Positions 1 to 59,299 of a stretch of DNA of 64,000 nt are shown piece by piece. Numbering within the stretch: position 1 is the stretch's first letter; every line of letters begins with the position of its first letter. The notes below the pieces were generated by a model. That model had not been told where the DNA came from, searched no databases, and worked only from the letters and a program-made list of their open reading frames with translations. The position numbers were made by a program, and so were the translations under genes. Where the stretch lies: assembly GCA_010909165.1 (NCBI GenBank), contig VJWM01000193.1, positions 186,001-250,000 of the forward strand, read 5' to 3'. The DNA comes from Anthoceros angustus (lineage: Eukaryota > Plantae > Anthocerotophyta).

Positions 1-810
1 AAGGTTGCAATACGGTCTCTCAACTCTGCGTCTGCTTGTTTGAAATTTTTATTTGTATTGCACCCTAAAACCCAAGATGCAAGAGATTCGTACCACACTG
101 TGCCATCTGAGTCTTCTTGAGGCCACCAACGAGGATTTTTTGTATAAGTAACTTTTAGATCTAGACGGCTACCAAGGGTTTCGCAAATGCCAGTCACATA
201 TTTCAAGATTTGTTCGCTTACATTCTTCCCAATGTGCATAGGGTCCATCAAGTGACGAATCAACAAATGCTGGGAACACAAAAATAAATTAAAAAAAAAA
301 TCAAAAGCAGTGAGCCAAAACAAAAGCAAAAAAAGCCTAAACAAAAACCATAGCAAAAGCCTACCTCCCAATATGGAAGCTCCCAAAAAATGGAGGAGAT
401 ATCACTAGTCACTCAACGGGGCCCTGGATGGCGAATTCTTCTTAAAGTACTCTTATGTTTGATCATGGTAGGGGTTGGTGCTAGGGCTGGGGTCCAAACA
501 CGCCTCTCTACTTTGCCATTAAACATATCTTTTTCCTCATCACGGAAAGGATGATCATCAGGGAGATGTAGTCTAAAATTGCCATCATAAATCATTTTAT
601 TTAAATCCTTGGAATTCCTAGCTTGCAAGTTTGTCCAACAAGGAGGGCAAGCACAATATCCCTTCGTTTGAAGCTTAGAAGTAAATGTATACCCTGGATA
701 ATCATGCATGGTCCATAGTAAAATAGCCTTTGTCACAAATGATTGTCCTGCAGCTCCAATCTGCATAGATGCATCAACTACTTGGACACCCTCTTCCCAT
801 AATAAATTCG
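1..810 (-). mobile_element. CACTA (En/Spm) TnpD transposase, central/C-terminal fragment with one intron (270-364)
   Basis: Translation gives LLWEEGV..ILLWTMHDYPGY..TKGYCACPPC..LPDDHPFR..FNGKVERR, then SIFWELPYWE | GT..AG intron 364-270 | HLLIRHLMDPMHIGKNV. These are typical TnpD motifs. Confidence 0.9.
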
Positions 811-886
811 CCCAACGGCGTAGCAGTTGTCGAGGTGGAGAACTGCTGGCCTTGCACGCTCTCTCGGTTGGGAATTCAAGAACGGC

Positions 887-1009
887 ATACCATAGTTGAT
901 CTGGCACTTCCGTAAGAGGTGGTGTGACACAGAACAAGTGATAACCCCCGTTGCAACCGTCGCACAGGAGCATGAGCTCTGCGTTATCCACCCTCCTGCA
1001 GATCTGATA
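887..1009 (-). CDS. PHD finger at the C-terminus of the Gypsy integrase (decayed)
   Basis: YQICRRVDNAELMLLCDGCNGGYHLFCVTPPLTEVPDQLWY fits the C4HC3 pattern; the first Cys codon reads TAT and the last Cys pair is lost at a junction. Confidence 0.85.
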
Positions 1010-4000
1010 GGGGTAGTCTGCTGGTGGGATCCAATCTGCTGTCACGATGTTAGGATCCAAGTTGGGCAAGTGGCAGGGTGCGCAATTCTTCATGTGATCG
1101 GTCATGGTCCTCCCATCTGACCCCTGCAATAGCAAAACGCCATTCCCCCGCATCTCCTTCACCCGGAGCACATGTCTGCTGGTGCTAGTATCCAAGGTAT
1201 CACTGTCATACTGAAGATACAACAAAACGACTGAACTTTGAGCTTGGGCTGAAGCTTCCGCGTGTGCGATATCGTAAGGTATCTCTGTCATGAGTTTAGA
1301 TTTGCCATGGCCATGGGCATCGCTTGCTTGAAGAGGGCTGCCCTTTCGCCTACAATTCAGGCCCATGTGGCTGGACTGTCCAAGTCCACGACCTGGTGCA
1401 TTTGTCGGGCAATGGCACTGGGCAGCATGGGTTCTCTTCCAAACAACAGGAAATATGGCGAGAAATGGGCCAAGGCTGCATGCTTGCTCATGCGATAGCC
1501 CATAGCAATATAAGGGAGGGCCAGGTCCCAATCCGTCTTGGGCATTTGGAGGCATAGCTTGCGGAGCCCTTTCTTAATTATTTGCACCATCCGCCGTACC
1601 ATCGGCTCGAGGATTGTCTCACCGGTTCGGCGGTGATCTATCGGCATCTAGGAGATCTTGGAATTCCATGAACTCGACCCTTGATCCGCTCACTGCACCG
1701 CCAAATCTCCCAACACATTATGCAAGAATGCTTGTGCGGTGCTACGGAACTCTTATCTGGGAGTGCCACTACCTCCACCCACTTGGAGAAGTGTTCCATC
1801 ACTCATCACATACACGCTTGCCTGGGCGCCTCGCGCCTCAATCGTCACATGACCACCAAAAATAGGCCCATAATGGGCAACGGTGCAACTGGGATGTCAA
1901 TGGTGAATGATGTCTTCACCCGATCGCATTGTTCACAACAGGCCACCTGTTGCTTCACTTGCAGGTACATCCCGTGCCAGTAGAAGTGGGGAGTGAGCAA
2001 ACTATAAGTTCGCTTAACACCAAAATGGCCCATGTCATTGTGCACACGCTTGATAAGGGCGCCTCTGTCGGCTGGTGGAGGCACAAGCCGTTCCACGCCA
2101 TTGCCCAACCTCCTGACAAGGTAGCCATCATGTTGATACAGTGCCCCGCACTGCCCCAGCTCATCTCGCACACGCAAGCATCAACCTGCTTGCACATACC
2201 TGAGGGTATGCTGGTCTTCCCAGATGTCCTTGACGAGTTTCCACCTGCAGATCACCGAACTTGTCCCTAGCATATCATGTCACCAAGGCGCAACCGTGAA
2301 AGCCTCATGTAGCCCTCGCCTTGCCGCCGTGCCTCCGTGCTATCCTCAGAGCTCTCATCCGGGTTCCTGGATAGGGTATCTGCATTCTGATGCTTGACTC
2401 CGGCCCGATGCACCACCACAAACTCGTAGTCTTGCAAAATCATCGCCCACCTGGCGAGTTTCCCACTTAGCTTTGAGTTGGCCATTAGCCACTTCAAGGG
2501 CTGGTGATCCGTGACTAGGGTGAAAGGCTGGCCGTACAGGTAGGGTCTAAAATGGCAAACTGCCCATACTGCGGCGAGACACTCGCCTTCATAGTTTTGC
2601 CTGCCTCACATGGTTGCTACGAGAAGCATATGCTATGACTCTCTCATGCCCATGCTCATCCAATTGTGTCGGACAGCCTCCCAGCCCAAGTTCCAGTCGG
2701 TATGGACAACAAAGGGTTTCCCAAAGTCCGGTCCGCCAATCGGAATCGGTGAGCTGTGACTTCAGCTCATCAAACGCCTGCTGAGCCGAACTTGTCCATG
2801 CCCATGTAGTGTCCTTGCGCAACATGTCATTGAGTGGCTTGGCAATTCTGCTGAAGTTCTGGATATACACCCGATAATAGTTGCACAAGCCCAGGAACGC
2901 CCTCACAGCTGATACATTGGTGGGTTCCTTGACCCGCAAGATGGCTTGAATCTTGGCTGCATGTGGCATCATGCCATTCGGGACAATCCTATGACTCAAA
3001 TATGCCATAGTGTTCATCCCAAATTCGCACTTTGCTGGGTGACAAGTCAATTGGGCCTCATGTGAGGGCCGGAACAGTCCTCAAGGTGGACCAAGTGTGA
3101 TTCAAGTCCTCAGCACAAGCACATCGCCTATGTAACAAAGTAGATTAGCACGGTCAACACTAGGTCCATCACCCGGAATGTTACGCCCTCGAACCCAAAA
3201 GGCATCACTAGCCATTCCACCTTGAGAGAACCGTGGAATGCGGTCTTTTGATGTCCTCCTCACTGTATGTTGAAACCTTGTCGCAAGTCCTGGAGAAATA
3301 GCCGACCGCCCAATGCTGTCAAAAATCTCCTCTGGAGTTGGCATGGGGTAACGGTCTTGAGCTGTGACGGCATTGATGGGGCGATAATCTCCGCACATCC
3401 TCTTCTCAGTCCATAGCCCCTGGCTGTCTTTCTTTGGTGGCATGACTGGCGCGAATCCAAACTTGATCCGGATGAGTCCGGCATCCAAGAGCTCCTTGCA
3501 CCTGGCGTCGACCATTTCCCATTCCGATTTGCTGAGCCGGTACCGTCGGCGGTAGATGGGCTCCTCGGTCAACACTAGGTCCATCACCCGGAATGTTACA
3601 GTGCTCGAACCCAAAAGGCATCACTAGCCATTCCCACAGCTGGTGAGAACCGTGGAATGCGGTCTTTTTGATGTCCTCCTCTGCTACCGGTACCTGGTTG
3701 AAACCTTGTCTCAAGTCCAGAGAAGTAATGGACCGCCTAATGTCACAAAATCTCCTCCGAGTTGGCATGGGGTAACGGTCTTGAGCGGTGACGGCATTGA
3801 TGGGGCGATAATCCCCGCACATCCTCTTCTCACCATAGCCCCCGGCCGTCTTCTTTGGTGGCATGACTGCGGGCGCTAAATCCAAACTTGACGGTCACGG
3901 ATGAGTCCAAAGATCCAAGAGCTCCTTGCACCTGGCGTCGACCATTTCCCATTCCGATTTGCTGAGCCGGTACCGTCGTCGGTAGATGGGCTCCTCAGTG

Positions 4001-4389
4001 GTCAACTTGATACGAAATGTGGTCACGTTGCACCGCTTGAGCTCCTTCATTGAAAATGCAAAACAATCCTTGTACCTAAGCAATAATGTCCTGATCCACT
4101 CACGCTGGTCATCAGTAAGCTCAGGTCCCATGGTCCAAAGGAACGTGTCCGCCGTTAAAGGTGGCTTGGATGGCGCTCCCCCTCCATCTGTCCCGGCATC
4201 CTGAAGGGTTGATGCAAGAAAAGTAGACCTTGAATCGCCCGCCACCCATACGGCCTCCTCCCTCCTCTGATCGAGCCAAGGATGAGGTGGTAAATCCGGG
4301 AAAGGGAAAGTGTACTGCATCAGTGGGGCAGGCATGTGCCGTGAGCGAATCTTTGCTTGGACCTCAAGATCTCGAATGCCAAACACAAG

Positions 4390-5300
4390 CTAACCAACCA
4401 TGTGACGGCGTTGAGGTCCATGGCTCGCCAAGTGCCGCATAACGCTTGGGAGACTGCGTGAAAGGAGTGAGTTTGGAAACCCATTAGCCTTTCCCTGCTT
4501 CCACGCAGGCTCCTCCCATTGTTGTGTGGTTGTATTTAGAGCAATCCAAAGACCTTGTCCCCTCAGAAGCATGTGAAGCGGGAAAAGTGACCAGTGTTGG
4601 GAGAGTGCTTCTGGGTGCCCTAGGAATGTTGGTGGGGTACCAGGGCGCTCTCTCGGCAGCCCTGACAAGCCTGGCTTGGTGGTGAGGTTCCAATACGGTC
4701 TGCAAGGCCAGCGTCGGGTCGTGTGTAGTGTTGCTAAGCACTATCTCCAGCACCGCCCTTGGCACCCAATTTGTCCAATAGTTGCGTAAGCGGTGCGTGT
4801 AGCTGCCCACTTGTGCTGCATCCATGAGGAAGGGGGGTCCCAGGTGATGTTGCACGAGCATCATGTCTTCTTTCACCTGGGCCCGTGAGTCAAACCGAGT
4901 GTGTGTTTTCCAGGGCGTACAATGAGGGCTATACTGGCCCCACACCAAGATCTGTAAGTCTCAAAAAGCCCCGTTGGGTCTTGGCAGCGTCACCGCCCGC
5001 CTTTTGAGAAAACCTTGCACTCCCATCCAAAGAATGACCAAGTCCATGGGAGCCAATGCATGGATGTGACGCCTTGGATGTACCAGACATCCCGTGGCGG
5101 TCATAAGGTACTGCCACAGTACAAATGACTAGGAAAGCGCAGCGTTCTTGGATGGGTAAAAGCCCAAAAGGTTGGGAGATCTCACAGCTTGTCAAGATGT
5201 ACCGGTGGATAGTGAGCCCGGCCTTGAGAATTGCTTCTAGGCCTGTGCATAACCCACCAAAGAGTTCAACCACCGTCACTCCTGCTGCAGGCAGTGTCCA
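4390..5300 (-). CDS. Cytosine-5 DNA methyltransferase domain inside Gypsy pol (DNMT3/DRM-like motif style), frameshifted
   Basis: Motif I VELFGG (5270-5253); motif IV GWEC (5028-5017); DPTGLF; motif VI YALENT (4919-4902); motif VIII DAAQVGSYTHRLRNYWTN (4822-4769); motif IX RERLMGF (4496-4476); motif X RYAALGxAMDLN (4444-4410). All in canonical order, across several frames. Confidence 0.88.
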
Positions 5301-5799
5301 CCTGATGGGTTGATGATCAACGTGCCCGGGTGAGTGGGTGGTCGGTGTAGGTGCCGCCCAAGAGTCGAGCACGGCCACTTGATCCTTGACCCCTTGCAAC
5401 ATGATAGTTGCATCTTCTCCCGCCGAAACAACCTCGCATGATCCGTGATATTATTGCCGCCCATGCTTCATTAGGCTCATCCTCGAGCTCGGGTGACAAC
5501 CATCTGTGCACGTGAGTGGTGTCCCTTGCCATCAGCGAAGTGCTGGCGCAACAGTTTGTTGTCAGGATGTGGCGCACAGCCAACGAAGCTTCATCCTCAT
5601 CACTCCTTCCATGCAGATGTAAGGGGAAGTGGGCCACCTCTTGGCCTCCACGTTGCCAATCTGGCCGGTAGTAGGCTTGCTCTGTCCAATTGTCGATACT
5701 GACACCTGGCGGGAAGAGAAATTCTTGCCCCAGCAGAACATCATAATTGGTAGCAGTGGTCACTAAACAATGGACAGCTCGTTGGACGCTCAGACATCT

Positions 5800-8700
5800 T
5801 CACGCGCGGCTCACCGTTGAGGTTGGAGCAGCGAACGCGGCGAAGAAGGCGCAACGTGCCAGCGGTCTCCGACAAGCGGCTACAGCAACCAAGGGAGGAG
5901 AAGGCGATGGCACCCAAAAAGCCTGCGGAAGTTTGGGAGCCATGGAACCTCGTGGAGCGCAACATTGTGACTCGGCGCTATCCGGACTTTGGGCCCTGGC
6001 TGGAGGAAGCAGGAGAATTGGTGCAGGAGTGGCACTTGGATGCGCTCCATGGTCCGACGCTCGGTCACCGTCCGGAGTTCGCCCGAAAATGCCGGCGGTC
6101 AATAAGGAGGTGCGGTCCAAGAACCTCCGGAGGACCCAAGGCGATGGACCTTGAGGTCCCGAGGCGCCTACAACCGCCCAAAGGAGGAAGAAGGGGAGGG
6201 TGCCGAGCCCCTCAAGGCGGGAAGATAGGGCCGCCACAGGGGCGCCGAGGCTCGACGCAGGACCACCAACGGATGGTCGATATCCGACCACCGGATACGA
6301 GTAAGGGCGGTAGCCCGATCATTGTCCATTGAACTCGCCACCAAGGTGGATCACCTTGGTGATAACTGCTGGTATTCCCCGCATGCGCCGCAATGGGGAA
6401 GAGGGCGGACTGGGAAGGATTATCTTCGCCGGCGTGAGGCCCGCAAGCTCAGACCGAGAAGCCTCGCCATCTGGGCCGCCCCATACCGATCCATGTATGG
6501 GGCATTTCGAGCTCCTCAAGGAAGGGGAGAGCTTGAGCGAGCGCCCGGAAAGGACCGAGGCCCCGCCGAAGTGGAGCGGCAAGGGCGCCGAGGGAGGAGG
6601 CCGATCGTCAAGGCCAAACGGACCCGGAGGAGGACGATCGAGGATTCCGACTCCATACGCCCTGAACGGACCCCTCACCACCTGTGGAAGTATGGAAGAA
6701 ATTCCCGCCTCCTCCCGTGCCCCAACCGAGAAGCCTCGCCATCTGGGCCGCCCCATACCGAGGAGCCCCGCCACCACCACCACAACCATACCGAGGAGCC
6801 TCACGACTGTGAGGGAGCCAAGAGACGCAAGACCACTTACCAACGCTGCACCTCGGGACGGTGCCAAGACTTACCCCGCCACCACAACCACACCGAGGAG
6901 CCCGCCGACTGTGAGGGAGCCAAGAGACGCAAGACCACCAACGCTGCACCTCGGGACGGTGCCAAGACTTACCCCGCCTACCTGAGTGGCAAGAAGCGAG
7001 GAAGCAAGAAGGAGGGCAGAGGGACGCCTGTGAGCAGGAGGACACCGGGCAGCAGACCCGAGCCGGGTCCTGCCGCCTGTGAAGGGGCAAAAGGCTTGCT
7101 CCCGACCCCTCACCTCCTCCGAGCCCTGTGGAGAAAAGGGCGAGAAGGAGCTCGCGCCAAAAGGGCCAAGGAGGGTGAAGCTCCGAGCCAAGACTCGTGA
7201 CCTAAGGGTCCCGATTAGGTCCGAGAACCCACCGACTTACTCCGGACAATGTATGGAGGTCCTGATCGGAAATGCCGGCCCCGCCACGGACTTTGTGGGA
7301 GCCTCACTGCGCCGTGGAAGAAACACGGCGGGTCCTGCCACTTATGGACATGCTGGGGTCTCGGGATGGCCGAGAAGACCTGTGGAGGTAGAAGCCACCC
7401 GAGGCGCATGGTACTCCTCCGTGAGCAGCTTGAGGGGCCCAGAGGCAGAAGGAAGGCCAAGCTCGGCCGATTGAGGAGGGAAACGCCGGAGGCCGAGAGG
7501 GAGGTCCGTCCATCCGCAAGGACCGACTAAATTCCTTCACCGGAGGAGCACTGGCAAGCTAAGGAGGCCCAAGCGGGCCGAGGACCTCCGCAGTGAGGGG
7601 CGAGCGCAGCAGAAGCGAGGCGCCCGGGCGCAAGCGAGCGGGCGCGGACCGCGAGGCAGCCGACCAGAGCCAAGCTGGAGAGGCTCAGGTGAAGGTGGCC
7701 AAGGAGGCGGAAGCCACGGCGAAGGCCGATCGCGATCACTATCGGCGTGATCGGAACCGGTGGAGGGAGGCGGCTGAGAGAGCCACGGCCAATCTGAAGG
7801 CCGAGCAGGTGGCAGCGGAGCAAGCACGGACGAGCCGTGCAGAAACACTGGAGGCCAGCACCCGGGAAATCGGGGACCTCAGGGCGCAGCTGCAGGAGGT
7901 AGAAGGGAGGCGGCAGGAGTTGGAGGACAGCAAGGACACCTTGGAGTTACAACTCCAAGACGCGTCGGAGCAGCAAGGAGTTCTCAACGAGAGAATCCAG
8001 GACTTCGAGCGGGAGATAGAGCGCCTCCAGCTCTGCCTGAAGATGGAGCAGGAGGTGGCGGAGCAAGCGCGGACCAGCCAGGGCCAAGAAGTTCGCGACA
8101 AGGAGATGGAGGATCTCCGGACTCACCGGAGGTGGAGCAAAGCAGCGTGAGATGGAAGACCGCAAGGAGACTTTGAGCCGCAGCCCAAACTATCATTGAG
8201 AGGAATGGTAGTTCAGGACATGGTCGCGAACGCGACGAAATAGAGCGGCCCGCCTGCTGGCGATGAGTCGACGGCGATGGAACAGGAGCGTGACGCCGAG
8301 ATGGAGAAGGGCCTGGCGAAGCCCGCACCGCAAAGGTTGCCCGACCGTCTGGAGAGGGAGATGGCGGAGTTAACAGCCAGAATGGACAAAGAGGCGAGGG
8401 CGCTGGAAGGCATAAGAAGCCGCCGTCCACCGAGGAAGGAAGGGAACGCCGCTATGGCGGGCAAGCCGGGCAGAACTAAGCGGAGGGAGTTGGAGCAGGT
8501 GGAGCAACAGCGACGGCTGCGGGAGGTGACCGAGGCAGCCCTGGCAGCCTCGCGAGAAGCAGCCCGGCTCCAGCTATCAAACCTGGCGGGGGAGGTGGAG
8601 CAACAAGCCGGCAACAGGCTCAGCTCCCGGAGCACCTATGGCGAAGGGAGTATCGGGTGCTCCGGGCGCACGTGGAAGAGGCAATCCAGCAAGTGGATTC

Positions 8701-8900
8701 GGACTTTGCCTATTACCACGCTGAGCTCCCAAGGAGGAGGTCCGTCCATCCGCAAGGACCGGACCTCGGAAGGCCCTGAGGGGAAGAAGGGCACGGGACA
8801 AAGACAGGACCCTAGGGGCCCTGTTTGGAGACGACGGCAGCGAGAGGAGAAGAGCCCCAAGAGGAGCGGGACGCAACGGACCCCATGGTAAGTTCACCAC
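5800..8900 (+). mobile_element. Repeat-family ORF region, copy 1 (MAPKK..WEPW..RYPDFGPW N-terminus, then long coiled coil), decayed
   Basis: Homologous to 59900-62270, for example EAQVKVAKEAEATAKADRDHYRRDRNRWRE and LEDSKDTLELQLQDASEQ in both copies. ATG at 5907. Confidence 0.75.
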
Positions 8901-8939
8901 CACCCGCTCCGGAGAAGGGAGGTGACGGGCCCGAAGGGT

Positions 8940-10069
8940 GCAGGGAGCCAACCCAACCAAGACAAGGGTCTGGGTAAGGAGGAGGACCTAGCAAGACGAG
9001 GTCCATGGTGAAGGGGTCCGGAGCTTGGGGACCGGACTGAATAAGTTCGACCCCGAGGTCCGAACCTGAGACGAGGCCGGACCCACCGACTCAGAAATAA
9101 GCCGGACCTGGAGTTCAGACTGAGTCGAGACCGACCTCGAGGTCGACTGGCAAGAAGGAGGAGCCCCTTCGACTTACGCTGGGGAGCAGATAGTGGCCCC
9201 ACCGAGGGGACCCATGGGAGGCTGGAGGATGACGTGGTAACGGCGGCCGCCGACCGCCGAGCCAACCCGATGTGATTCCGGGAGAGGAGGGGTCCCGCGG
9301 ATCATCCGATTGCGCGCGCAATCGCCGTGACGGGAGATTGGACCACCAATCCCAAGGCGGAACTCGGACCTTCCCACCACCGCCGGCGAAGGAGATAGGG
9401 GAGGGAATAGGATGGTAGGCGTCGATTAGGCATACCGAAATGGGCCATCACCGTAATAGGGGTGTAATAAAGACGCCGACCGGCGTAGTATAAGAGGGTC
9501 AGCCTCAATAAATCATCTTTCTTGGTGTTGATGCCGCTGCCTGCACCTTGTGTGTCTTCTTGCTAACGTGAGTCCCGAGTCACCGAAAGGTGCACGATAC
9601 CCGAGGGATTGATCGTGGTCCCGTGACGGACCTAACGTGTTGTGGTGTGTGCAGTGGAAGGGTGATCGGGACCGTGCGCCCGAGCCGCGCCGTCACCGAA
9701 CGGACCGAACGTGAGCCGAGGGGACTGGAGGGCGGCAGAGCCCGGACGAGAGGCCCAGAACGCGAGGAGGTCCGGATCGTAACCCGCCTTTCCTTAAGAC
9801 CGATAAGTGTAGTGTGAGTGGAGAGAGGAACGACGAGAGGTGTGAGAGACGAACGGAACGAAACGGACGCGAACGGTCCTTAAACGCTTGGCCATACCGG
9901 CCTGTGCGGTGTTTGTCGCGAGTAGTTAGACGTGAGCTGAGGAGTGTGTGCGTTGGAACTGAACGGACGCAAAGTAAGACGAGAATCGCCGAACGGACCG
10001 AACGGAGCTCGCTATTCCTTGGGAACGAACTCCTTCCTACAACGACACGGACGGGCGCCCACCGGGGCC
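8940..10069 (+). mobile_element. LTR-like sequence with TATA box, AATAAA and a degenerate tRNA-Lys PBS
   Basis: TATAAGAG at 9489-9496 and AATAAA at 9507-9512. The segment ends ..CCTACA/ACGACA (10041-10047) and is followed by GGGCGCCCACCGGGGCC (10053-10069), resembling the tRNA-Lys PBS TGGCGCCCACCGTGGGGC. Left boundary uncertain. Confidence 0.5.
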
Positions 10070-14316: not shown

Positions 14317-15330
14317 TCAGCGCGGCCGCCTCCGCGGTTGCTGCCTAGCCCTGTGGCCCATGGGTGTTCCCCTGGCTCTCCTGCCACGCCTCTGATCCGA
14401 ACGATTCTCCCCCAAGACCTCCACCTCACTTTCCGTCATGTTCCTTCGCCTCCCATGTGGCGTGCTGCCCCTATGCTCGTTATCCCGCCTCCCGGGATGG
14501 CCCACACCGTGCGCTCCTCCCTCCACGCCCGGCCTCCGCCCGCCATCTCCTCAGCACCACTTGCGGGCGAGGCCCCGCCTCCCGCTTGAAGGAACCACTG
14601 GTAGACGCCCGTGGCAGTTAAGATGTGCGTGGTTTCGCCCCTCCGTCCCAACAACCACATACATATTTAGAGTGAGCACCCGCTCACCATGCATGCGTGG
14701 CTGACATGAGCATCCTCATCCGTGACGCAAAGACAATACGCCTTCATATAAAGGTCCTTACCTCTCCGCCTGTGGACAATCTGGACGTTTCCCCGAATGT
14801 GGGAGTTGTATCCCACCGCAGCCTCCCGCTTGGGGCTTCCCCACCTCAATTCCCCTTCCATGATGGTGGTGGTTTAGCCACCGTGGAAGTTTCCTACGGT
14901 TGCAGCCCCATCATGGCATTGCTCGCCTTCTTCGGTTTGCCCGCCTCTCTCTTGACTCTAGCCCTAGCCTCATCTCTCTCCCGCTTATATCTCTCCGCCA
15001 GTTTCTTGAATTTCTCCAGAGGCGCCATCATCTCCACCGCTTGACTCAAACCTCATTCGAGCTCCTCAATCGTAGCGTGCGCTCCTTTTACTTGATTCAC
15101 TAGGGCCTCCTGTTGGGTGGACATGGCCCTTAGCTGCTCCTGTGCCTTGCACAATGCCTCATCGCACTCCCGTCTGCGATCCTCTGCCACCTTGTTCTCG
15201 CCCTCCAAGCCCTCCAACTTTCCCTTGAGCAACTTCTCTTGTTGCCCCTGCACACTCAGCCAAGTGAGAGCCATGGCCGCCTGGTCGAGAAGGTCTGATA
15301 GCAAGCTAACGATTGTGTGTGCAGATCCCC
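14317..15330 (-). pseudogene. Decayed coiled-coil, TE-accessory-like coding region
   Basis: LLKGKLEGLEGENKVAEDRRRECDEALCKAQEQLRAMSTQQEALVNQ..*..KFKKLAERYKRERE with in-frame stops; no family recognised. Confidence 0.4.
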
Positions 15331-16806: not shown

Positions 16807-19800
16807 TTAGGGTCGACCCTTACAGCTGCAACAACCAGCTGCGAATCGATGCACACGGAAACCATCCCTCACAACAATGTGTCTCTGTTCAAGCATTGAC
16901 ATGATCTCCGTGGAACTGTGGCAGTCACTGCACATTCGTAGATTCTTCGTTACCACCAGAGGTGTCCCACTGGGCGTGTTCAAGAGACCAAACGCCAGAG
17001 CTAGCTTCTCCGCATGCCCACAAAGCGCATCTTCCTTTTCCTTCTCACACACTGGCTTCAAAACCAACTTTGTGTGAGGTACGTGGCCTCCTTCCTGCTT
17101 CAGACGTGAATTCGTGCTCTCTACCTTGAGCGCAATATCCTCTCTCCTTTCTCCCACCAGGAATGTGTGTACCTGCTTTTTCACCTCAACGGTCGCCACT
17201 GCAGGTTTCTTGTTAGCTCCTGCTACCATTCTCTGTGTTTCAATCCTGTCTACATCGGTCCACCTACCTGCATCTGCGTAGGCATTGGCCATGAGCACAT
17301 GAGCAGACGCGTTTTTGGGGTCCAGCTTAACAATGCTTTCAAAACACCAGATAGCCCTCTCTATATCACCGTGACTTTTGCAGGCATTCAACAACGACGT
17401 CAAGCCCACAACATTACTTTCGAATTGACCCTCACATGATAATAGCATCTTCTCTGCCTCATCTAAATGGCCAGCACGCCCAAGAAGATCAATCATGCAG
17501 GTGTAATGTTCAATAGTAGGTTTGATGCCATGCTCTGCAGCCATGGAATCAAAGTGTTTAAGACCCTCGTGGACCAGTCCCTCATGGCTGCATGCTACTA
17601 GAAGGCAAGTAAAAGTAGCACCATTAGGCTGAACACCAGCAACTAACATCTCCTCGAAACAAGCTAGTGCCTTGTGACCTTCATCACAAGTACCATACCC
17701 AGATATCAGGGCATTCCATGTCACCACATCCTTTGTGTTCATGCTGTCAAAAACCTGGCGTGCATCTTCCAGTTCACCACATTTTGCATACATGTCCACC
17801 AGGCAGTTGCCCACCACCATCATCCAGCAGTCCTCTTTCAACAATCTGTGAGTGCAGCTGCCTGCCCTTCTGTAAGGCACCAGTGCTTGCACAGGCCTTC
17901 AGAAGGCAAGCAAAAGTAACATGGTCAGCCAAAATGAGGCCCGCCTCCTCCAGTTGTCCATACACAACAAGCGCCTCTTGGCCAAGTCCTTGCTGTGCAT
18001 ACCCAGCAATCAGGGCGGTCCATGTCACCACATTCTTGGTGGTCAAGCTCTCAAAAACCTGGCGTGCATCTTCCAGTTCACCACATTTTGCATACATGTC
18101 CACAAGGCAGGTGCCCACCACTATGTCGTCCAGCAGTCGTCTTCCCACAATCTGTGAGTGCAGCTGCCTGCCCTTCTGTAAGGCACCAGTGCTTGCACAG
18201 GCCTTCAGAAGGCAAGCAAAAGTAACATGGTCAGCCAAAATGAGGCCCGCCTCCTCCATTTGTTCATACACAACAATCGCCTGTTGGCCGAGTCCTTGCT
18301 GTGCATACCCAGCTATCAAGGCAGTCCATGTCACCACATCCTTGGTGTTCATGCTGTCAAAAACCTGGTGTGCGTCTTCCAGTTCACCACATTTTGCATA
18401 CATGTCCACCAGGCAGTTGCCCACCACTACGTTATCCAGCAGTCCTCTTCCACAATCTGAGTGCAGCTGCCTGCCCTTCTGTAAGGCACCAGTGCTTGCA
18501 CAGGCCTTCAGAAGGCAAGCAAAAGTAACATGGTCAGCCAAAATGAGGCCCTCCTCCATTTGTCCATACACAACAAGCGCCTCTTGGCCGAGTCCTTGCT
18601 GTGCATACCCAGCAATCAGGGCAGTCCATGTCACCACATCCTTGGTGTTCATGCTGTCAAAAACCTGGTGTGCGTCTTCCAGTTCACCACATTTTGCATA
18701 CATGTCCACCAGGCAGTTACCCACCACTACGTTATCTAGCAGGCCTCTTCCAACAATCTGTGAGTGCAGCTGCCTGCCCTCCTGTAAGTCACCAGAGCTT
18801 GCACAGGCCTTCAAAAGGCAAGAAAAAGTAACATGGTTAGCCAAAATCAGCCCCTCCTGCTCCATTTGTCCATACACAACAAGTGCCTCATGTCCAAGTC
18901 CATGCTGGGAATACCCAGCAATCAGCACCGTCCATGTCACCACATCCCTTGTGGTCATGCTGTCAAAAACCTGGCGTGCATCTTTCAGTTCGCCACATTT
19001 TGCATACATGTCCACCAGGCAGTTACCAACAAACAGGTTACTAGGAATGCCACTCTGCACCACATCACAGTGCACTTTTCTGCCAGATTCCAAGTCGGCA
19101 GCTATGGCACAAGCTTGAAGGGCAGCTACAAAGACGTGAGCATCCGCCTTCACTCCTGACCTACGCATCTCATGGTAGAGTTGTACGGCCTTATTAGGTT
19201 TCCCATTCTTGGCGTATGCGGAGATTATGGAAGACCACATAAAGGCATCCGGTTTGCCCACCCTGCTGAGCACATCCATGGCCTCTTCTAGCCTACCTCC
19301 ACATGCATACATGCGCAAGATATGGTTCCCCAAGTATGTATTCGACTCATACCCAAGTTGGACACTGAGGTTATGGACTCGTCGCCCCACAACCAAATCC
19401 TTCTTGGCTGTACACAGTTTAAGCACAATGCACAACAGCTCGTGAGAAACAGCAGAGTCTGTCTGCGCCAGAGATTCCAGGGCTCCAACGGCCGCAGAAA
19501 GCTTCCCCTGCTGACATAACAAGCTCACGGTTTCAGCCGTTACAACGCCCATTTTCGATCGTGCACGCCTCCCAGGTTCAGGATTACCTGAAGAACAGGC
19601 ACCATGGCTCATGTGCAAATCCAAGGAAATGAGCTGCTCATCAACCCAAGCTGGCTTAAACATGTTGTTTAACCACAGCACCTCGCCGGACCCCTTACGC
19701 CGGAAGTCAGGCGAACGGGAGCGCATCTTGTCTCGTCTGTTGTCCCACCACATGGTAGGGTCCAAAAAAAATTGCTGCCACAAGTGCTCCTGCTCCTGGC

Positions 19801-20005
19801 AACGACCATCGCTGGAAAATCCGTCCCCGCCAACACCCTTTTTCGGAGGTGGACGTGCTGGGCTCCTCACACTGCTGAACCGGGAGGCTTTGTTTGCCAT
19901 GGGTTGACTCCCTAAGATGTGGTGACCGGGAGGTCCTGGTAGAATCCCTGTAACCACACCAATTTGTTGGGTCCACAACGGGTCCGGTAGCCATACTGTG
20001 GCCAT
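16807..20005 (-). CDS. PLS-class PPR protein with E domains and DYW:KP (GRP-ending) deaminase domain; one frameshift near 17820
   Basis: Intronless; repeated VVGNCLVDMYAKCG/DVVTWTALIAGY triplets, E1/E2, then KKPAVATVEV, HAEKLA, CSDCH and terminal CSCKGRP. ORFs 17774-20005 and 16807-17892 join through an apparent 2-nt loss in a GTG run. Confidence 0.93.
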
Positions 20006-35119: not shown

Positions 35120-38100
35120 CTACCGGCTCATTTCGGACATGAACCGCTCATACTCCGACTCAACCGCATTGTTTTGCTGGCCATTTGTCGCAGAGACACT
35201 CGCAGTGTTTGCCCAAGGAGGTGGCATGCCACCAGGAGGTGGAGGTGGTGGCTGTGAAGGAGGTGCACTCGTTGGAGGAGGCGGGGGTGCTGAATAATAG
35301 CCAGCATATTGAGGCATGGGCATGTAAGAACTGCTTCCCATCGGGCCAACAGGTGCACTGGGAGGTCGAGTTCCTGGCCTGGGACCCATGACATTTATAG
35401 GGCTTGGAGGCATCCCAGGTATGCTCGGTCCAGCAGCAGGAGCACCTGGCAGTGTTCCTGCAGCCGGTGGCTGTGTTGGTTGTCCAGGTGGAGGGGGCCC
35501 TGATGGGGGAGCCCCTTGAGAAGGGAGTCCCGAGTACACACTGTAGGGTCCTCCGTAGATTGGAGGAGGCGGACCACGGGGAGGTCCACCAGGAGGTGGC
35601 GGTCCTGCAGGCGGTGGAGGCCCATACATATTACCTGGCGGCGGACCATACGGACTGTATGGCGGATGACCGCCAGGGGCCACCCAAGGCGGCATCCTCA
35701 TCTGTCCACCAGGGGGCCCCCGAGGTGGTTGCTGCTGTGAAGACTGCTGGGATGGTGGGGCCTGCGGTGGTGGCTGTTGTTGTTGTGGAGGAGGATATCC
35801 ACCACCCATCATCTCCATTCCACCTGGATGTGGCCCACCAGAAGGAGGAGGACGACCTGCGACTCGCACTGCTAAGATTTTACCATCAAGTCTATAACCG
35901 TTCATGTGAGCAACAGCCTGCGCTGCACAAGTAGAATCAGTATATTTCACAAACCCATAGCCCTTGCTAGATCCATTCATTCTGTCACGAATGACCTTAG
36001 CATCTTCCACCCGGCCAAATGGTGAAAACAGCCGCAAAAGACCCTCATCATCCACAGAATTGGGCAAGTACCCAACATATAGGTTTGAGTCATCACCATC
36101 CTTGCTGAACTTTGAACCACCACTAGTACCTGGAGGTCCCTGCTGATAGAAGCTATTAGCAAAGCCCTGCTGTTGAGGCATCCCACCAGTTCCTGGAGGG
36201 GTACCCATAGGGGGACCCATTGTTCCTGCTCCCACAAATGTGTCTGACAGACTACCCAGCCCTGGACTGCCGCCCATCCTTCCTGCACCCATACCTCCAC
36301 CGCCTGGTACTCCAGCACCGGCACTTCCAGAACTCGACCCACTTCCAGCACCTCCTGACCAGGGCCCCGCCTGACCCTGCGGACCTGGAAGGGATAGCTG
36401 AGGTCCAGCCTGCCCTCCGCTACGCCCAACATCTCCACTCCCACTACTGCCATCACCGCCTCCCAATTCAGCCAGAAAGCTCTTGTACTCATCATCCATC
36501 TTGTTGCCTTGCGTAGACCCCTTGAGCGGACAGTCAAGAGTAGGATGCCCACCGTCACCACAGATGCGGCAGCTCACGTCACTCTTGAAGGTAGAATGAC
36601 GGGCTGGGCACGCGTATTGACGATGACCCGGCTCTCCACATAACCGACAATACTCATCATCTCTGATAGTCCCATTAAGAGCTGCAAGCTCCCGAAGTTG
36701 AGCTCGCTTGTGCTCATTCCTCCCTTCCTCAACAGGTACCAACAATTTCTCAACCATCCCACCAGCCTTCTCCAAGCCATCAGCTGTATCTGCCTCTATC
36801 AACACATGCAGATCTTCATTCTCAGAAGGATCTGGCTTCATGTCACGTCTCTGCTGCGATCGACCTTCTTTCACCGAGCCCTTGCCCCGTATCACTATTT
36901 TCGCACCCGTTTCCCTTTCCATCCGCTTCTGAGTGTTGCCACGGGGGCCAATGATGAGACCAATGAAATTGTACCCAGGATACTCCTTCACCGGAATGTA
37001 CAACTTCTTGTACAGTTTCGGTGGCTTGTAATCCGCAGGAGGTTTGAAATGAGGATTCTTCTTGATCAACTGCGTGATAATCTCCTGTCTCTCCCTGGTC
37101 AACTTCTCTCGTGCCCTATACTCCCGGGTGTTTATCCTTATCCCCATATTATCATAAATGGGCTCCGGAGAAGGAGACCTCGCACCATCGGGCCTCTCAT
37201 CAAGAACCTGCAAGAAAACTCGCTCCATAAGCAGACAAAAACCCTCCTCACAAACGCAGCACAACCTCTTACGGCTCCCTCCGACCCACCTTGTCACACC
37301 CACAAACAACCATGCAAAACATACCCACCACCGAAGTCCATAAACCACAAAACCCCAGCACTCCCTTCAAGCAATCCTGCCATACCTGCCCCGTAGACAA
37401 CTTCCTATTAATATCCAGCAGCTTGATATTCAGCGCCTGCAACTCCGGATCCAACTCCACCCCACCAGTCAGCTCCTTCACGAACTCAGGAAGCTGAATC
37501 TGGCCGAGCAGCTGCTTCGGCGCATCATCAGCCCACCTGGACTTGCGCTTCTTCACACTCCCTTCCCCGTCCTGATTCTCCCCCTCCCCATCCGGCTGAG
37601 GCCCCCACCTACTCCGCCTCCTCTTCCCGGAGCCCCCATCCGCCGCAGCCACCTGACTCTGCGCAGCGTCCCCTGCCCCGCCGACCCATCACTCCCGGGC
37701 CGCTGCGACCCAGTGTCGTAACTGCTTCCGCCGCCCCTGTTCACAGCCTCCTCCTTCACCCCGTCTCCTGCCCCACTATCCCTATCATACCCTCGTCCCT
37801 CCCAGCAACCCCGCCATAGCCGTCATAGGTATAGTTCACCGCCGGCTTCCCCTCCTCCTGCCCCTGCGCGGCCATGTACTGCCCAGAATACTGCCCTGGG
37901 GTATACTCTACCGCCTCCCCGCTGGTGCTGATGCTGCCCTTCTCCCCTCGTAGCCCGCGTACTGCCCCTCGTAGCCCTGCTGCTGCGGCTGCTGCGCCGT
38001 CCCCAGCCCCTCCCGCCCTTGTACTCCGAGTAGTAGCACTCCCGGGGCTGCGTGTAGGGATCCACGGGGCCCCAGTGGCGGATCCACATACCCCTGAGCC

Positions 38101-54560: not shown

Positions 54561-57500
54561 TTAGACAGTGGACGTAGCGGCTAGGAATTCCTGTGAATCT
54601 CCTAGCCTCAAACCTTTCACATATTTGAAGTGCAACTCTCTGTTTAGAGCTTTGGTAAGTATATCTGCGGGGTTGTCTTGTGTTGGCACGTACTGTAATT
54701 CTATCTTTCCAATTGCCACTAGCCCTCAAATATAATGATACTCTACTTCCACGTGCTTAGTGCGTGAGTGGAAGACTGGATTCTTAGCGAGCGCCATGGA
54801 GCCTTGATTGTCTGTATGGATTGTCGTGCATGTAGGTATAGGAATCCCGAGATCCTCAAAAAGCAGTTTACACCACACAATCTCTTTTGCAGCTGCTGTT
54901 AGGACCCTGTATTCTGCTTCTGTAGATGATAGGGCCATTGTGGGCTGCTTTTTACTAGACCAACAGACTGGTCCACTTGCAATGGAGACGACATAGCCAA
55001 AAATTGACTTCCTGCTGTGCGCATCTCCTCCATAGTCTGAATCTGTGAAAACTTCAAGGTCTAATGGATTTCCTTTCAGGTGGTGATACTTAATACCCAT
55101 GTTAGATGTGCCCCTAAGATATCTAAACGCTCGCTTGAGACTTGTCCAATGTTCTTGACCTGGAATTTCCAGGAACTGAGATAATACACTGGTTGTGAAG
55201 GCAATCTCCAACCTTGTAGTGTTGGATGCATAGATAAGCTTGCCAACACCTTGCCAGTAAAGGACACCAATCATCTGGTCCTTTTCTGCTTGTGTAGATG
55301 GGGACATACTCTTACTGAGTTTCAGTCCTGTGGGCAAGGGTGTAGCTGCAGGCTTTGCGTCCTTAAGACCAAGTTGTTGTGCACTATCCAGGAGATACCT
55401 TGGCTGTGTTAAGGTCATAACTCGAGCCTGCCTGTTCCTTAGTATGTGGACACCGAGACAGCTCTATAAGGGTCCAAGGCTTAAATCTCCTTGCAAGCAT
55501 ATCTGTAATCTTTGTAATGAATGCCTGGCTATTGCTTGACAGGATCAAGTCATCAACGTACATGGCCAAGTAACAAATCACATCGCCTTTCTTGTAGATA
55601 TAAAGGCTGCCATCTGCTAGGCTCTTAGTGAAACCTAAAGCTAGAAGTTGAGAATCTAGCTTTGTGTTCCATTTCATTGCTGACTGCTTGAGACCATACA
55701 GGCACTTAATTAGCTTGCACACATGGTCCTCTTTGGATTTAATCTCATATCCTGGAGGTTGTTGCATGTATATCTCTATATCAAGCTTTCCGTGCAAGAA
55801 AGCTGTCTTTACATCATACATTTGCAGTTCATAATCATGATGTGTTGATATTGCGAGGATGACACGAAGTGTGGCTAGCTTCACTACTGGAGCGAAGGTC
55901 TCGAGATAATCAAGTCCAGGGACTTGTGAAAAACCTCGTGCTACTAGCCTGGCTTTGTACCTGTCAAAGGTACCGTCAGCTTTCACTTTCAGTTTGAACA
56001 CCCACTTATAGGACACCATTTTCCTGCCATGAGGTAACTTAGCTATCTCCCATGTGCCATTTTCTATTAGTAAATCATATTCTGATTGTATGGCTTTCTC
56101 CCACTCCTTGTGATCAAGTCTGCTCAATGCCTCAGCATAGGACTGTGGTTCTATGGGATCAAGGGAGGTGGCAGCATGAACTTGCACATGAGCAGAGGAA
56201 GTTCGAAAGTCAGGGGCACGGTAATAATCAAGAGGTCTCCTTTCACGAGTGGGATATCGTCGAAACGGTTCTGGCAGTAGTGCTGGTGACCACCAGTGGT
56301 TCAGGTTCTTTAAGAGTGTCATCACCATCAACAGCGTTAGCAGGCTGGTAATCAGCCTCTGAATGATCAGCTTGAATTTCAGCTTGGGCAGTATCCAGGC
56401 TAAACATCATAATTTTTGAAGGTGGTGAATAATCTCAAGGGGTTTTAGAAATAATCTCAAGGAGTTTTGATGGGCCCAAACAAAAGCTTAAGGCATTCCG
56501 GAAAACATCTCCGAAAAAGGTGTCACCACTAAAGTTCCTACTTTCCATCCAAGAATGTTTCGCCGAATGGTGGTTGCAAACTCGAACCTATGGGATTAAT
56601 GCAAAGTAGAACGTAAGGAAGGCCGCTCGGAAGGGACAATCAGAATTCAGCTTTTGGGAGAAAATGTGGTTTAGTAAGGACACAACAAAAGCCACTGATG
56701 TGGTATTTCCAAAACACACAACATCCGGAACTGACGCATAACATTCACTCTAGCTAAGACCCCGGGACAAACCGTGATTTCAGTTTCACTCATCACCAGA
56801 GTTCAATTCTTCGTCATCACTTGGTCCAGCTTCTCTAGCATTGTCATCACTATCTTCAACGGCTCTTTGACTCGCAGGCTGTATGAAGCCGCACAACTCG
56901 CAGAGCTTATTCCTTATCTCTTTTTTGTCCACCGCATACACATGTTTCCGTGCGTTCAACACAAACCCATAATACAGGATGGCTGTTTCATTCACAAACA
57001 CCTCCTGTATGTTTTTCGGGTAATGGACCTTATTCCCTTTTTTCCTTGGCATCAGACCAGATGGGTTGGCACTTTGATGGACTATGTATTCCTACACATA
57101 TCTCCCTTCGTACGCATCTGTGTGCTCGGTCCGATACCAATGGATAAGAAAGTGAGGTCGTGGTGCATCTAGCTTTGCGTCAATGGCTCTCCCCAATCCA
57201 GAATGGCCTGTTATGCGTGTCCATAGTGCACGGCACTGCCAGAAACATCCCCCTCCAGATTTCCATTATGTCCCCATTCATCCGCGCCATTCCCACTATT
57301 GCCTTCCGGCATTTTGATATGCCCCCAAGTACATATCACGCTGTTGGAAGTCCCTCTATAATGCCTCATCTAGCAAAGCTTCATCCGGCACTTGAAGTGG
57401 TCAGGCTGTATGATCCACTTCTGCACGTGAAAACCACTTCCAAGGACGCTGTAGCACTAGCCCAACGTTATTCTCCACAATGATAGCAATCTCCTCCTGG

Positions 57501-59265: not shown

Positions 59266-59299
59266 ACTCTCCTCGGGAGTAGGAAAATGAGTTAGGCTT

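What the first reader, a model, noticed from the sequence alone, without database searches (positions are those of the whole stretch)
4390..5300. Ty3/Gypsy retrotransposon encoding its own cytosine-5 DNA methyltransferase inside pol
Seen: seven C5-MTase motifs in canonical order (VELFGG, GWEC with the catalytic Cys codon intact, DPTGLF, YALENT, HRLRNYWTN, RERLMGF, RYAALGxAMDLN). They sit between the protease C-terminus (YDVLLGQEFL) and the RT, on the pol strand. Known: as I recall, retrotransposon-borne cytosine MTases have been reported in dinoflagellates and a charophyte alga (Klebsormidium); I know of no described land-plant case. Inference: this may be a land-plant (probably hornwort) lineage of self-methylating Gypsy elements that methylate their cDNA or insertion sites. 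This copy is frameshifted.
Basis: partly seen in the sequence, partly recalled or inferred. Interest (0 to 1): 0.92.

Follow-up and report, generated by a model that had tools for sequence, protein, structure and literature searches.

The report
Decayed methylase-carrying Gypsy retrotransposon, hornwort-like plant
This is a broken, truncated copy of a jumping gene (Ty3/Gypsy retrotransposon) that carries its own DNMT3-type DNA-methylating enzyme between protease and reverse transcriptase; papers describe this kind only from an alga, but here it also turns up in land plants (this hornwort-like genome and two liverworts).

Summary
All seven motif strings lie on the minus strand at the stated places, spread over three reading frames. 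A frameshift-aware alignment of 5354-4371 to an intact relative scores 417, against 39-61 for controls.

The 154-aa in-frame piece finds 364 protein clusters (best E 6e-20). Many are long Gypsy polyproteins that pass Pfam's C5-methylase cut-off. A profile of the domain and a confident structure model both match DNMT3A/3B/3C best.

The order PR-MT-RT-RH-IN is native, not a one-off capture. It recurs in Closterium (with LTRs), in the liverwort Calypogeia fissa (intact PR-MT frame), as a remnant in Marchantia, and on a metagenome contig. A much larger chlorophyte group places the same domain between RNase H and integrase instead.

The host is a land plant, most likely a hornwort. The window copy is dead:
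- it is cut inside the protease and after the PHD finger;
- its methylase part has roughly 7-10 frameshifts and 1-5 stops;
- its RT carries a tandem duplication.

Self-methylation is untested. The scan found this family before on other DNA of the same genome (s1-253330 and several first-reader notes). In the papers I could search, only Klebsormidium is described. I class it as a new member of a known kind, of moderate interest.

The parts
5584..5799 (-). C-terminal part of the aspartic protease. The N-terminal half with the catalytic Asp, and gag, are missing: the element is cut at about 5800-5900.
   Evidence: tblastn with the P0058 PR segment hits 5778-5584 at 38% identity, E 9e-13. YDVLLGQEFL lies at 5716-5745. 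No PR or gag homology lies above 5800; a plus-strand ORF family starts there.
4371..5354 (-). DNMT3-like C5 DNA methyltransferase domain with motifs I, IV, VI, VIII, IX and X in canonical order. It is decayed: about 7-10 frame changes and 1-5 in-frame stops, depending on the reference used.
   Evidence: Frameshift-aware alignment scores 417 against 39-61 for controls. phmmer with the piece 4484-4948 gives best E 6e-20. The family profile matches DNMT3A/3B best, E about 1e-23.
3151..4006 (-). Tandem duplication inside the RT: 3151-3573 and 3566-4006, 87% identical. It repeats the N-terminal RT segment.
   Evidence: Self-blastn, direct repeats D7 and D9, and two tblastn hits of the same RT residues at 4017-3559 and 3566-2748.
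2748..4017 (-). Reverse transcriptase, including the duplicated segment.
   Evidence: Pfam RVT_1 on ORF 3406-3885, E 5e-8. tblastn with the variant-B RT gives 39-44% identity, E 5e-56 and 3e-28.
2327..2731 (-). RNase H.
   Evidence: tblastn with the variant-B RH gives 58% identity over 145 aa, E 6e-46, against 39% for the variant-A RH. Pfam RT_RNaseH_2 hits ORF 2589-3050 weakly.
1380..2177 (-). Integrase: H2C2 zinc-binding domain plus catalytic core, in several frames.
   Evidence: Pfam Integrase_H2C2 on ORF 1845-2177, E 3e-17. tblastn with the variant-B IN hits 2090-1746 at 46% identity, E 5e-27. The lower end is read from ORFs 1638-1802 and 1357-1647 and is approximate.
884..1027 (-). PHD finger at the integrase C-terminus. 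It is the last recognisable part of the element.
   Evidence: Pfam PHD, E 2.6e-9, on ORF 413-1555. tblastn with the PHD of P0002 gives 40% identity, E 3e-7.
413..880 (-). Boundary marker, not part of the element: a fragment of a CACTA-type (Tnp2) transposase joined in frame to the PHD finger. It marks the 3' truncation.
   Evidence: Pfam Transposase_21, E 8e-18, on residues 252-355 of ORF 413-1555.

Best explanation
Window 884-5799 (minus strand) is a dead, doubly truncated copy of a Ty3/Gypsy LTR retrotransposon. Its pol reads protease, DNMT3-like C5 DNA methyltransferase, RT, RNase H, integrase, PHD finger. The methylase is a heritable module of a streptophyte element lineage, called 'variant B' here. 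The same order occurs in Closterium, in liverworts and in this hornwort-like genome, and the lineage is most likely the same kind as the published KnitGypsy-Dnmt3 of Klebsormidium. Shown: the homology, the domain order, the DNMT3-like sequence and fold of intact relatives, conservation of the catalytic Cys and of motifs I, VI and VIII across the family, the land-plant host, and the decay of this copy. Inferred, not shown: in intact copies the domain is made as part of Pol. It is then released or left attached after protease cleavage and de novo methylates cytosines (probably CG, as DNMT3 does) on the element's new DNA or its surroundings. Meanwhile the PHD finger on the integrase reads a histone H3 tail state to steer integration. 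The copy in this window has no function now.
For: The motifs are in place. The frameshift-aware alignment scores 417 against 39-61 for controls. The search found 364 related clusters, many of them long polyproteins. PF00145 is above the gathering score in P0002, P0001, 17 of 26 aligned domains, the Calypogeia ORF (40.6 bits) and the Closterium ORF. The family profile matches DNMT3A/3B/3C at E about 1e-23, DRM at 1e-13 and M.HhaI at 1e-8. The AlphaFold2 model of the liverwort domain has pLDDT 93.6, and its best PDB matches are DNMT3A/3B/3C at E about 1e-18, TM 0.83. The PR-MT-RT-RH-IN order lies in one frame in Closterium L001 and metagenome L002, and in Calypogeia L004. Closterium has 98-99% identical LTRs plus the A-coding-B-A-B repeat layout that PMC5890265 reports for KnitGypsy-Dnmt3. 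The window's RH, IN and RT are closer to variant B than to variant A: 58/46/39-44% against 39/35/33-34%. Spacing from PR to MT and from MT to RT leaves no room for foreign insertion boundaries. The intact host ORFs in the same window, SF1 at 742 aa and PPR at 743 aa, argue that the many frameshifts are real decay and not assembly error.
Against: No Klebsormidium sequence was at hand, so identity with KnitGypsy-Dnmt3 rests on architecture and repeat layout, not on a tree. In the MT tree the window sits on a very long branch (2.6) and cannot be placed. In the target-recognition stretch it is slightly more like a variant-A protein (50%) than like P0058 (38%). Most family members have Glu instead of the near-universal Pro before the catalytic Cys, and the only published activity test of the algal counterpart was inconclusive, so catalysis is unproven. 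The window holds no LTRs and no gag. No expression or methylation data could be obtained.
Confidence: 0.85

Rival explanations
1. One-off capture: this single Gypsy copy picked up a host DNMT3 gene fragment, so the methylase is not a family trait.
For: Only one copy lies in the window, and that copy is rearranged in other ways: an RT duplication and a chimeric 3' end.
Against: The same PR-MT-RT-RH-IN order occurs in Closterium, Calypogeia and a metagenome contig, with similar spacers. First-reader notes list further copies elsewhere in this genome (unverified).
Confidence: 0.02
2. Rearrangement chimera: a fragment of the chlorophyte-type element (RT-RH-MT-IN-PHD) was pasted between a protease and an RT, by nested insertion or by mis-assembly.
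For: Most relatives found, 177 of 261 mapped, have the domain between RH and IN. The target-recognition stretch is 50% identical to a variant-A protein.
Against: Independent genomes show the PR-MT-RT order in a single reading frame. The window's RH, IN and RT group with those elements. No RH or IN fragments flank the window's methylase.
Confidence: 0.03
3. The element-borne domain is a real DNMT3 relative but no longer a DNA methyltransferase. With Glu in place of the motif IV Pro, it would act as a SAM- or DNA-binding or regulatory module, or on another substrate.
For: The dipeptide is EC in about 129 and PC in about 31 of some 174 domains. KnitGypsy-Dnmt3 gave no detectable methylation in yeast, though human DNMT3B failed there as well.
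Against: The Cys is present in every domain where motif IV was located, motif VI EN is present in all 181, and motif VIII R.R is present in 177 of 181. Such conservation is expected for a working active site. Some members, including the liverwort copy, keep the canonical PCQ. Related DIRS-borne DNMT3 domains do methylate CG.
Confidence: 0.2
4. The bryophyte copies stem from horizontal transfer from algae, not from vertical descent within streptophytes.
For: The distribution known so far is patchy, and the closest relative of the Calypogeia domain is an unnamed environmental sequence (P0382, 60% identity).
Against: The lineage is present in Zygnematophyceae, liverworts and a hornwort-like plant, which fits descent. 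The tree has no resolution on this point.
Confidence: 0.2

Closest known systems
KnitGypsy-Dnmt3 of Klebsormidium nitens (de Mendoza et al. 2018, PMC5890265)
   Same: A DNMT3-type, non-rearranged methyltransferase lies inside the Pol ORF of a Gypsy element in a streptophyte. The Closterium relative of the window element has the A-coding-B-A-B repeat layout reported for it. The paper reports that motif X is poorly conserved, and here it reads G-x-x-M-D instead of the usual motif X.
   Different: The host is a land plant. The window copy carries a PHD finger after the integrase, and the word PHD does not occur in the paper. The domain order of the algal element could not be read because figures are not held. 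No direct sequence comparison was possible.
Chlorophyte Gypsy polyproteins with RT-RH-MT-IN-PHD ('variant A' here; e.g. hypothetical proteins of Chlamydomonas eustigma, Haematococcus lacustris, Monoraphidium neglectum, Chromochloris zofingiensis)
   Same: The methyltransferase domain is homologous (30-50% identity) and shares idiosyncratic motifs such as AHRLRNYWTN, LPTLVA and ERERALGY. Both have a PHD finger at the integrase C-terminus and a Gypsy backbone.
   Different: The methylase sits between RNase H and integrase, not between protease and RT. RT, RH and IN are only 33-39% identical to the window's. I found no paper describing this group.
SymbioDIRS-Dnmt3 and SymbioLINE-Dnmt of Symbiodinium (PMC5890265)
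   Same: These are retrotransposon-borne C5 methyltransferases. The DIRS ones are DNMT3-type and methylate CG de novo in yeast.
   Different: The backbones are unrelated (DIRS with a tyrosine recombinase, and LINE), the hosts are dinoflagellates, and the acquisitions were independent.
Accessory enzyme domains in retroviral pol, such as dUTPase (my own knowledge, not tested here)
   Same: An extra enzyme is inserted at inter-domain joints of pol. As I recall, dUTPase is placed between RH and IN or next to PR in different retroviruses, which parallels variants A and B.
   Different: The enzyme and the hosts differ. This is only an analogy for how modules move within pol.

Membership tests
C5 cytosine DNA methyltransferase (Pfam PF00145) | Motif I (F-x-G-x-G, SAM binding) | tested here: met
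   ELFGGLCTG at 5253-5270 and nearby. F and G are invariant in the family alignment.
C5 cytosine DNA methyltransferase (Pfam PF00145) | Motif IV catalytic Cys (normally P-C-Q) | tested here: met
   The TGC codon in GWEC is intact, and the Cys is invariant in the family. The preceding residue is Glu, not Pro, as in about 129 of 174 relatives. The window reads ECK, a form seen in 6 relatives.
C5 cytosine DNA methyltransferase (Pfam PF00145) | Motifs VI (E-N-V), VIII (Q/H-x-R-x-R), IX (R-E) and X in canonical order | tested here: met
   ALENT, HRLRNYW, RERLMGF and AMDLN lie in that order along 4919-4410.
C5 cytosine DNA methyltransferase (Pfam PF00145) | Significant match to the curated profile | tested here: inconclusive
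   The window's ORF pieces give no hit. Their homologues pass the gathering score, and the window piece matches those homologues at E 6e-20. An X-joined read-through could not be sent to Pfam because it has no reference.
DNMT3 class | Closest to DNMT3 catalytic domains among characterised methyltransferases, by sequence profile and by fold | tested here: met
   By profile: DNMT3A/3B/3C at E about 1e-23, against DRM at 1e-13 and M.HhaI at 1e-8. By Foldseek on the liverwort model: DNMT3A/3B/3C first, E about 1e-18. These tests were run on intact relatives, not on the window copy.
DNMT3 class | Branches inside the DNMT3 clade in a phylogeny with DNMT1, CMT, DRM, DNMT4, DNMT5 and DNMT6 | not tested
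   No reference sequences of these classes could be obtained.
Ty3/Gypsy LTR retrotransposon | pol order PR, RT, RNase H, IN (integrase after RT) | tested here: met
Ty3/Gypsy LTR retrotransposon | gag and flanking LTRs | tested here: not met
   Both are absent from the window copy, which is truncated at about 5800 and about 880. Both are present in the Closterium relative: zf-CCHC gag and 0.54-kb LTRs 98-99% identical.
KnitGypsy-Dnmt3 lineage | DNMT3-type domain within Gypsy Pol in a streptophyte | tested here: met
   with the definition taken from PMC5890265.
KnitGypsy-Dnmt3 lineage | DIRS-like repeat layout (A-coding-B-A-B) | tested here: inconclusive
   It cannot be seen in the truncated window copy. 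In Closterium L001 the layout is A 7441-7981, B 14342-14447, A 14452-14973, B 14977-15082.
KnitGypsy-Dnmt3 lineage | Sequence clustering with the K. nitens copies (RT and DNMT trees) | not testable with these tools
   No K. nitens sequence appeared among the named hits, and none can be fetched here.

The most novel reading that the evidence does not exclude
A single ancient green-lineage group of Gypsy elements carries a DNMT3-type methylase plus a PHD finger. In this group the methylase module has moved between two joints of pol: RH-IN in chlorophytes and PR-RT in streptophytes. The group has persisted into land plants, with copies in bryophytes that still have intact methylase frames and may be active. 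That would give a genetically tractable land-plant setting in which to test why a transposon encodes the mark that silences transposons.
Probability: 0.4. Interest if true: 0.75.

Novelty: new member of a known kind. Interest (0 to 1): 0.55.

Why it matters
Cytosine methylation is the main way plants silence transposons, so a transposon that brings its own de novo methylase is a paradox. It has so far been studied only in dinoflagellates and one charophyte alga. Finding the same element type in a hornwort-like genome and in liverworts moves the question into land plants, and one of those liverworts is Marchantia, a model species. In land plants methylomes, mutants and transformation are available. 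The contrast between two insertion points of one methylase module, and the near-universal Glu-for-Pro change at the catalytic dipeptide, also give concrete handles for enzymology and for tracing how pol acquires new domains. The copy in this window is only a fossil. Its value is as a marker of the family.

Tried and rejected
- Pfam on ten separate ORF pieces found no methylase. The pieces are too short, so this is not evidence against homology.
- phmmer of the 154-aa piece against PDB sequences found nothing.
- The word-indexed search with the motif I piece (4929-5402) found nothing. It sees only proteins of 86-275 aa.
- The look-up of sequencing runs listed no run, so no reads could be laid. 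Expression and assembly accuracy remain untested.
- CpG observed/expected is 0.62 for the element and 0.52 for the methylase part. That is no different from host genes (0.39-0.48) or the whole window (0.64), so it is no sign of special methylation decay.
- Only some of the suggested frameshift sites sit in A-runs. Homopolymer error therefore cannot explain them, and the intact host ORFs argue the same way.
- The MT tree (64 rows, quick method) could not place the window copy because its branch is 2.6 long. The split between variants A and B has only moderate support (SH-aLRT 90, one A row outside).
- Name look-ups for 30 representatives yielded only three names: Closterium, Marchantia and Calypogeia.
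- Seven literature searches found no land-plant or chlorophyte report. The library lacks most subscription journals, so absence is not proven.
- The ESM Atlas look-up gave only a lead: a eukaryotic PF00145 cluster, commonest in Streptophyta.
- Host-gene capture and chimera readings were considered and rejected; see the rival explanations.

Full report
**What is at the site.**
On the minus strand, the stretch 5799-884 reads as a Ty3/Gypsy pol. Its parts are:
- the C-terminal part of an aspartic protease (5799-5584);
- a methyltransferase-like stretch (5354-4371);
- RT (4017-2748), with an internal tandem duplication (3151-3573 and 3566-4006, 87% identical);
- RNase H (2731-2327);
- integrase (about 2177-1380, with a Pfam H2C2 zinc domain at E 3e-17);
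- a PHD finger (1027-884).

These assignments rest. The Cys codon of GWEC is an intact TGC, followed by a TGA stop at 4990-4992.

**Is it more than chance?**
Pfam sees nothing in the separate ORF pieces, and neither does a PDB sequence search. That is a matter of fragment length. The longest in-frame piece (4484-4948, 154 aa) found 364 clusters at E<=1e-3 and 117 at E<=1e-10 among 1.84 billion representatives, with a best E of 6e-20.

I wrote a frameshift-aware local alignment of an intact relative's domain (P0058, residues 1265-1615) to the DNA. It runs colinearly from 5354 to 4371 with a score of 417 and 130/314 identities. The reversed protein, eight shuffled proteins and the wrong strand score 39-61.

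The path needs about 7-10 frame changes and passes 1-5 stops, depending on the reference. Host ORFs in the same window are unbroken: SF1 at 742 aa and a PPR at 743 aa. Only some of the shift sites lie in A-runs. This is therefore real decay and not assembly noise.

**What the domain is.**
Long relatives pass Pfam's gathering score for PF00145:
- P0002 and P0001;
- 17 of 26 aligned domains;
- the liverwort ORF, at 40.6 bits;
- the Closterium ORF.

The 26-sequence alignment keeps several positions invariant or nearly so: motif I F-G-G, an acidic motif II, the motif IV Cys, motif VI E-N, motif VIII R-x-R, a P-T-L target-recognition motif and motif IX E-R-E. A profile of this alignment hits DNMT3A/3B/3C at E about 1e-23, plant DRM at about 1e-13 and M.HhaI at about 1e-8.

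An AlphaFold2 model of the intact liverwort domain is confident (pLDDT 93.6, pTM 0.92). Its best PDB matches are all DNMT3A/3B/3C catalytic domains (E about 1e-18, target TM 0.83). The motifs run I to X without the rearrangement seen in DRM.

One oddity stands out. The residue before the catalytic Cys is Glu in about 129 domains and Pro in about 31 of some 174. The window's ECK form occurs in six relatives.

**Is it part of the element?**
The relatives fall into two architectures.

*Variant A* is RT-RH-MT-IN-PHD. It holds 177 of 261 mapped proteins. Its named members come from the chlorophytes Chlamydomonas eustigma, Haematococcus lacustris, Monoraphidium neglectum and Chromochloris zofingiensis.

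*Variant B* is gag-PR-MT-RT-RH-IN, the order in the window. I found it in four other places:
- Closterium sp. NIES-68 (GJP34393.1, locus L001), in one frame. It has zf-CCHC, an aspartic protease and PF00145 in one ORF, followed by RT-RH-H2C2 and rve. It is bounded by 0.54-kb LTRs that are 98-99% identical.
- A JGI metagenome contig (L002).
- The liverwort Calypogeia fissa, on a 13-Mb contig (L004). A 780-aa ORF there joins a protease with a D-S-G motif to a complete methylase with the canonical PCQ, followed by RT, RH and IN.
- Marchantia polymorpha (L003), as a PR plus half-MT remnant.

The window's RH, IN and RT are closer to variant B than to variant A: 58/46/39-44% against 39/35/33-34%. 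The PR-to-MT spacer is similar in length to the one in Calypogeia, and the MT-to-RT spacer is short. This rules out a one-off capture and a pasted chimera.

**Relation to what is published.**
PMC5890265 describes DNMT3-type domains in the Pol of a Gypsy element of Klebsormidium nitens. That element has DIRS-like repeats (A-coding-B-A-B), Ka/Ks below 0.2 and an inconclusive activity test. The paper also describes DIRS and LINE elements with DNMTs in Symbiodinium, where the DIRS-borne domains do methylate CG in yeast.

The Closterium variant-B element shows exactly the A-coding-B-A-B layout. This is my best link between variant B and the Klebsormidium element, but I had no K. nitens sequence with which to test it.

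The species table of that paper includes Physcomitrella, Selaginella and angiosperms. I saw no hornwort, liverwort or any of the chlorophytes named above in the passages retrieved. Papers from 2025-2026 still cite only that work for streptophytes. My other searches found no land-plant or chlorophyte description.

**Host.**
The SF1 ORF at 35120-37348 is most like liverwort and moss proteins among named species, at 73-86% identity over the aligned parts. The PPR gene next to it ends in a DYW:KP-type domain (KKPAVA, HAEKLA, C-terminal GRP). To my knowledge that domain type occurs in hornworts, lycophytes and ferns. Taken together, these point to a hornwort. Earlier notes of the scan name Anthoceros, which I did not verify.

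**State of this copy.**
- It lacks gag, the catalytic half of the protease and both LTRs.
- At about 5800-5900 it abuts a plus-strand ORF family.
- At about 880 the PHD finger runs in frame into a CACTA Tnp2 fragment.
- It is a fossil. Its amino-acid motifs are still readable, so it probably encoded a normal domain when it inserted.

**Mechanism.**
For intact relatives I favour the following reading. The domain is translated within Pol. It de novo methylates the element's new DNA or its neighbourhood, probably at CG. The PHD finger guides integration by reading histone H3. All of this is inference from homology and from the Symbiodinium assays. The Glu-for-Pro change and the negative yeast result for the algal element leave room for a non-catalytic role, which I put at about 0.2.

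**Earlier scan results.**
A follow-up on another piece of this genome (s1-253330) reached the same reading. Several first-reader notes list more copies 'between protease and RT' and a second diverged family. I could not read those pieces.

**Verdict.**
- It is a new member of a known kind.

Noticed in passing
window 5817-9000 (+) and 59943-62176 (+): A GC-rich, A-skewed ORF family has an N-terminal WEPW / RYPDFGPW motif and a long charged coiled coil, with no Pfam hit. It occurs twice (69-73% DNA identity), each time directly abutting the truncated 5' side of a minus-strand retroelement pol: the Gypsy-DNMT copy here and a Copia element at 54726-59473.
   Followed up: partly
window 413-1555 (-): One open frame of 380 aa runs from the integrase C-terminus through the PHD finger into a CACTA-type Tnp2 transposase fragment (Pfam Transposase_21, E 8e-18). 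This is a chimeric junction that marks the element's 3' truncation.
   Followed up: partly
proteins P0002, P0026, P0176, P0183, P0197, P0244 and about 170 others: A large group of Gypsy polyproteins has the order RT-RH-DNMT3-like MT-IN-PHD. It occurs in chlorophytes (Chlamydomonas eustigma, Haematococcus lacustris, Monoraphidium neglectum, Chromochloris zofingiensis) and in many metagenomes. I found no paper describing it.
   Followed up: partly
family alignment A1/A2; window 5017-5028: In this transposon-borne DNMT3-like family the near-universal Pro of the catalytic Pro-Cys dipeptide is Glu in about three quarters of members (EC about 129, PC about 31 of some 174). The Cys is present in every domain where motif IV was located.
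   Followed up: partly
L001 7441-15082 (Closterium sp. NIES-68, BQMA01000470.1): An apparently young, complete variant-B element has LTRs at 7441-7981 and 14452-14973 (98-99% identical). A second 106-nt repeat flanks the 3' LTR (14342-14447 and 14977-15082). This gives the A-coding-B-A-B layout published for KnitGypsy-Dnmt3. It has no PHD finger after the integrase.
   Followed up: partly
L004 12990-14903 (-) (Calypogeia fissa): A second Gypsy RT-RH-IN in the opposite orientation lies just after the integrase of the DNMT-bearing element. It is only 30-38% identical to that element, and no methylase was detected in it. It is probably a nested insertion that interrupts the first element.
   Followed up: no
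window 16807-20005 (-): A PPR gene has a C-terminal DYW:KP-type domain (KKPAVA, HAEKLA, CSDCH, ending GRP). I used it only as a clue to the host.
   Followed up: partly
window 35120-37348 (-): Splicing factor 1 / branchpoint-binding protein (SF1-HH, KH and RRM domains) forms a single 742-aa ORF. Its best named relatives are liverworts and mosses.
   Followed up: partly
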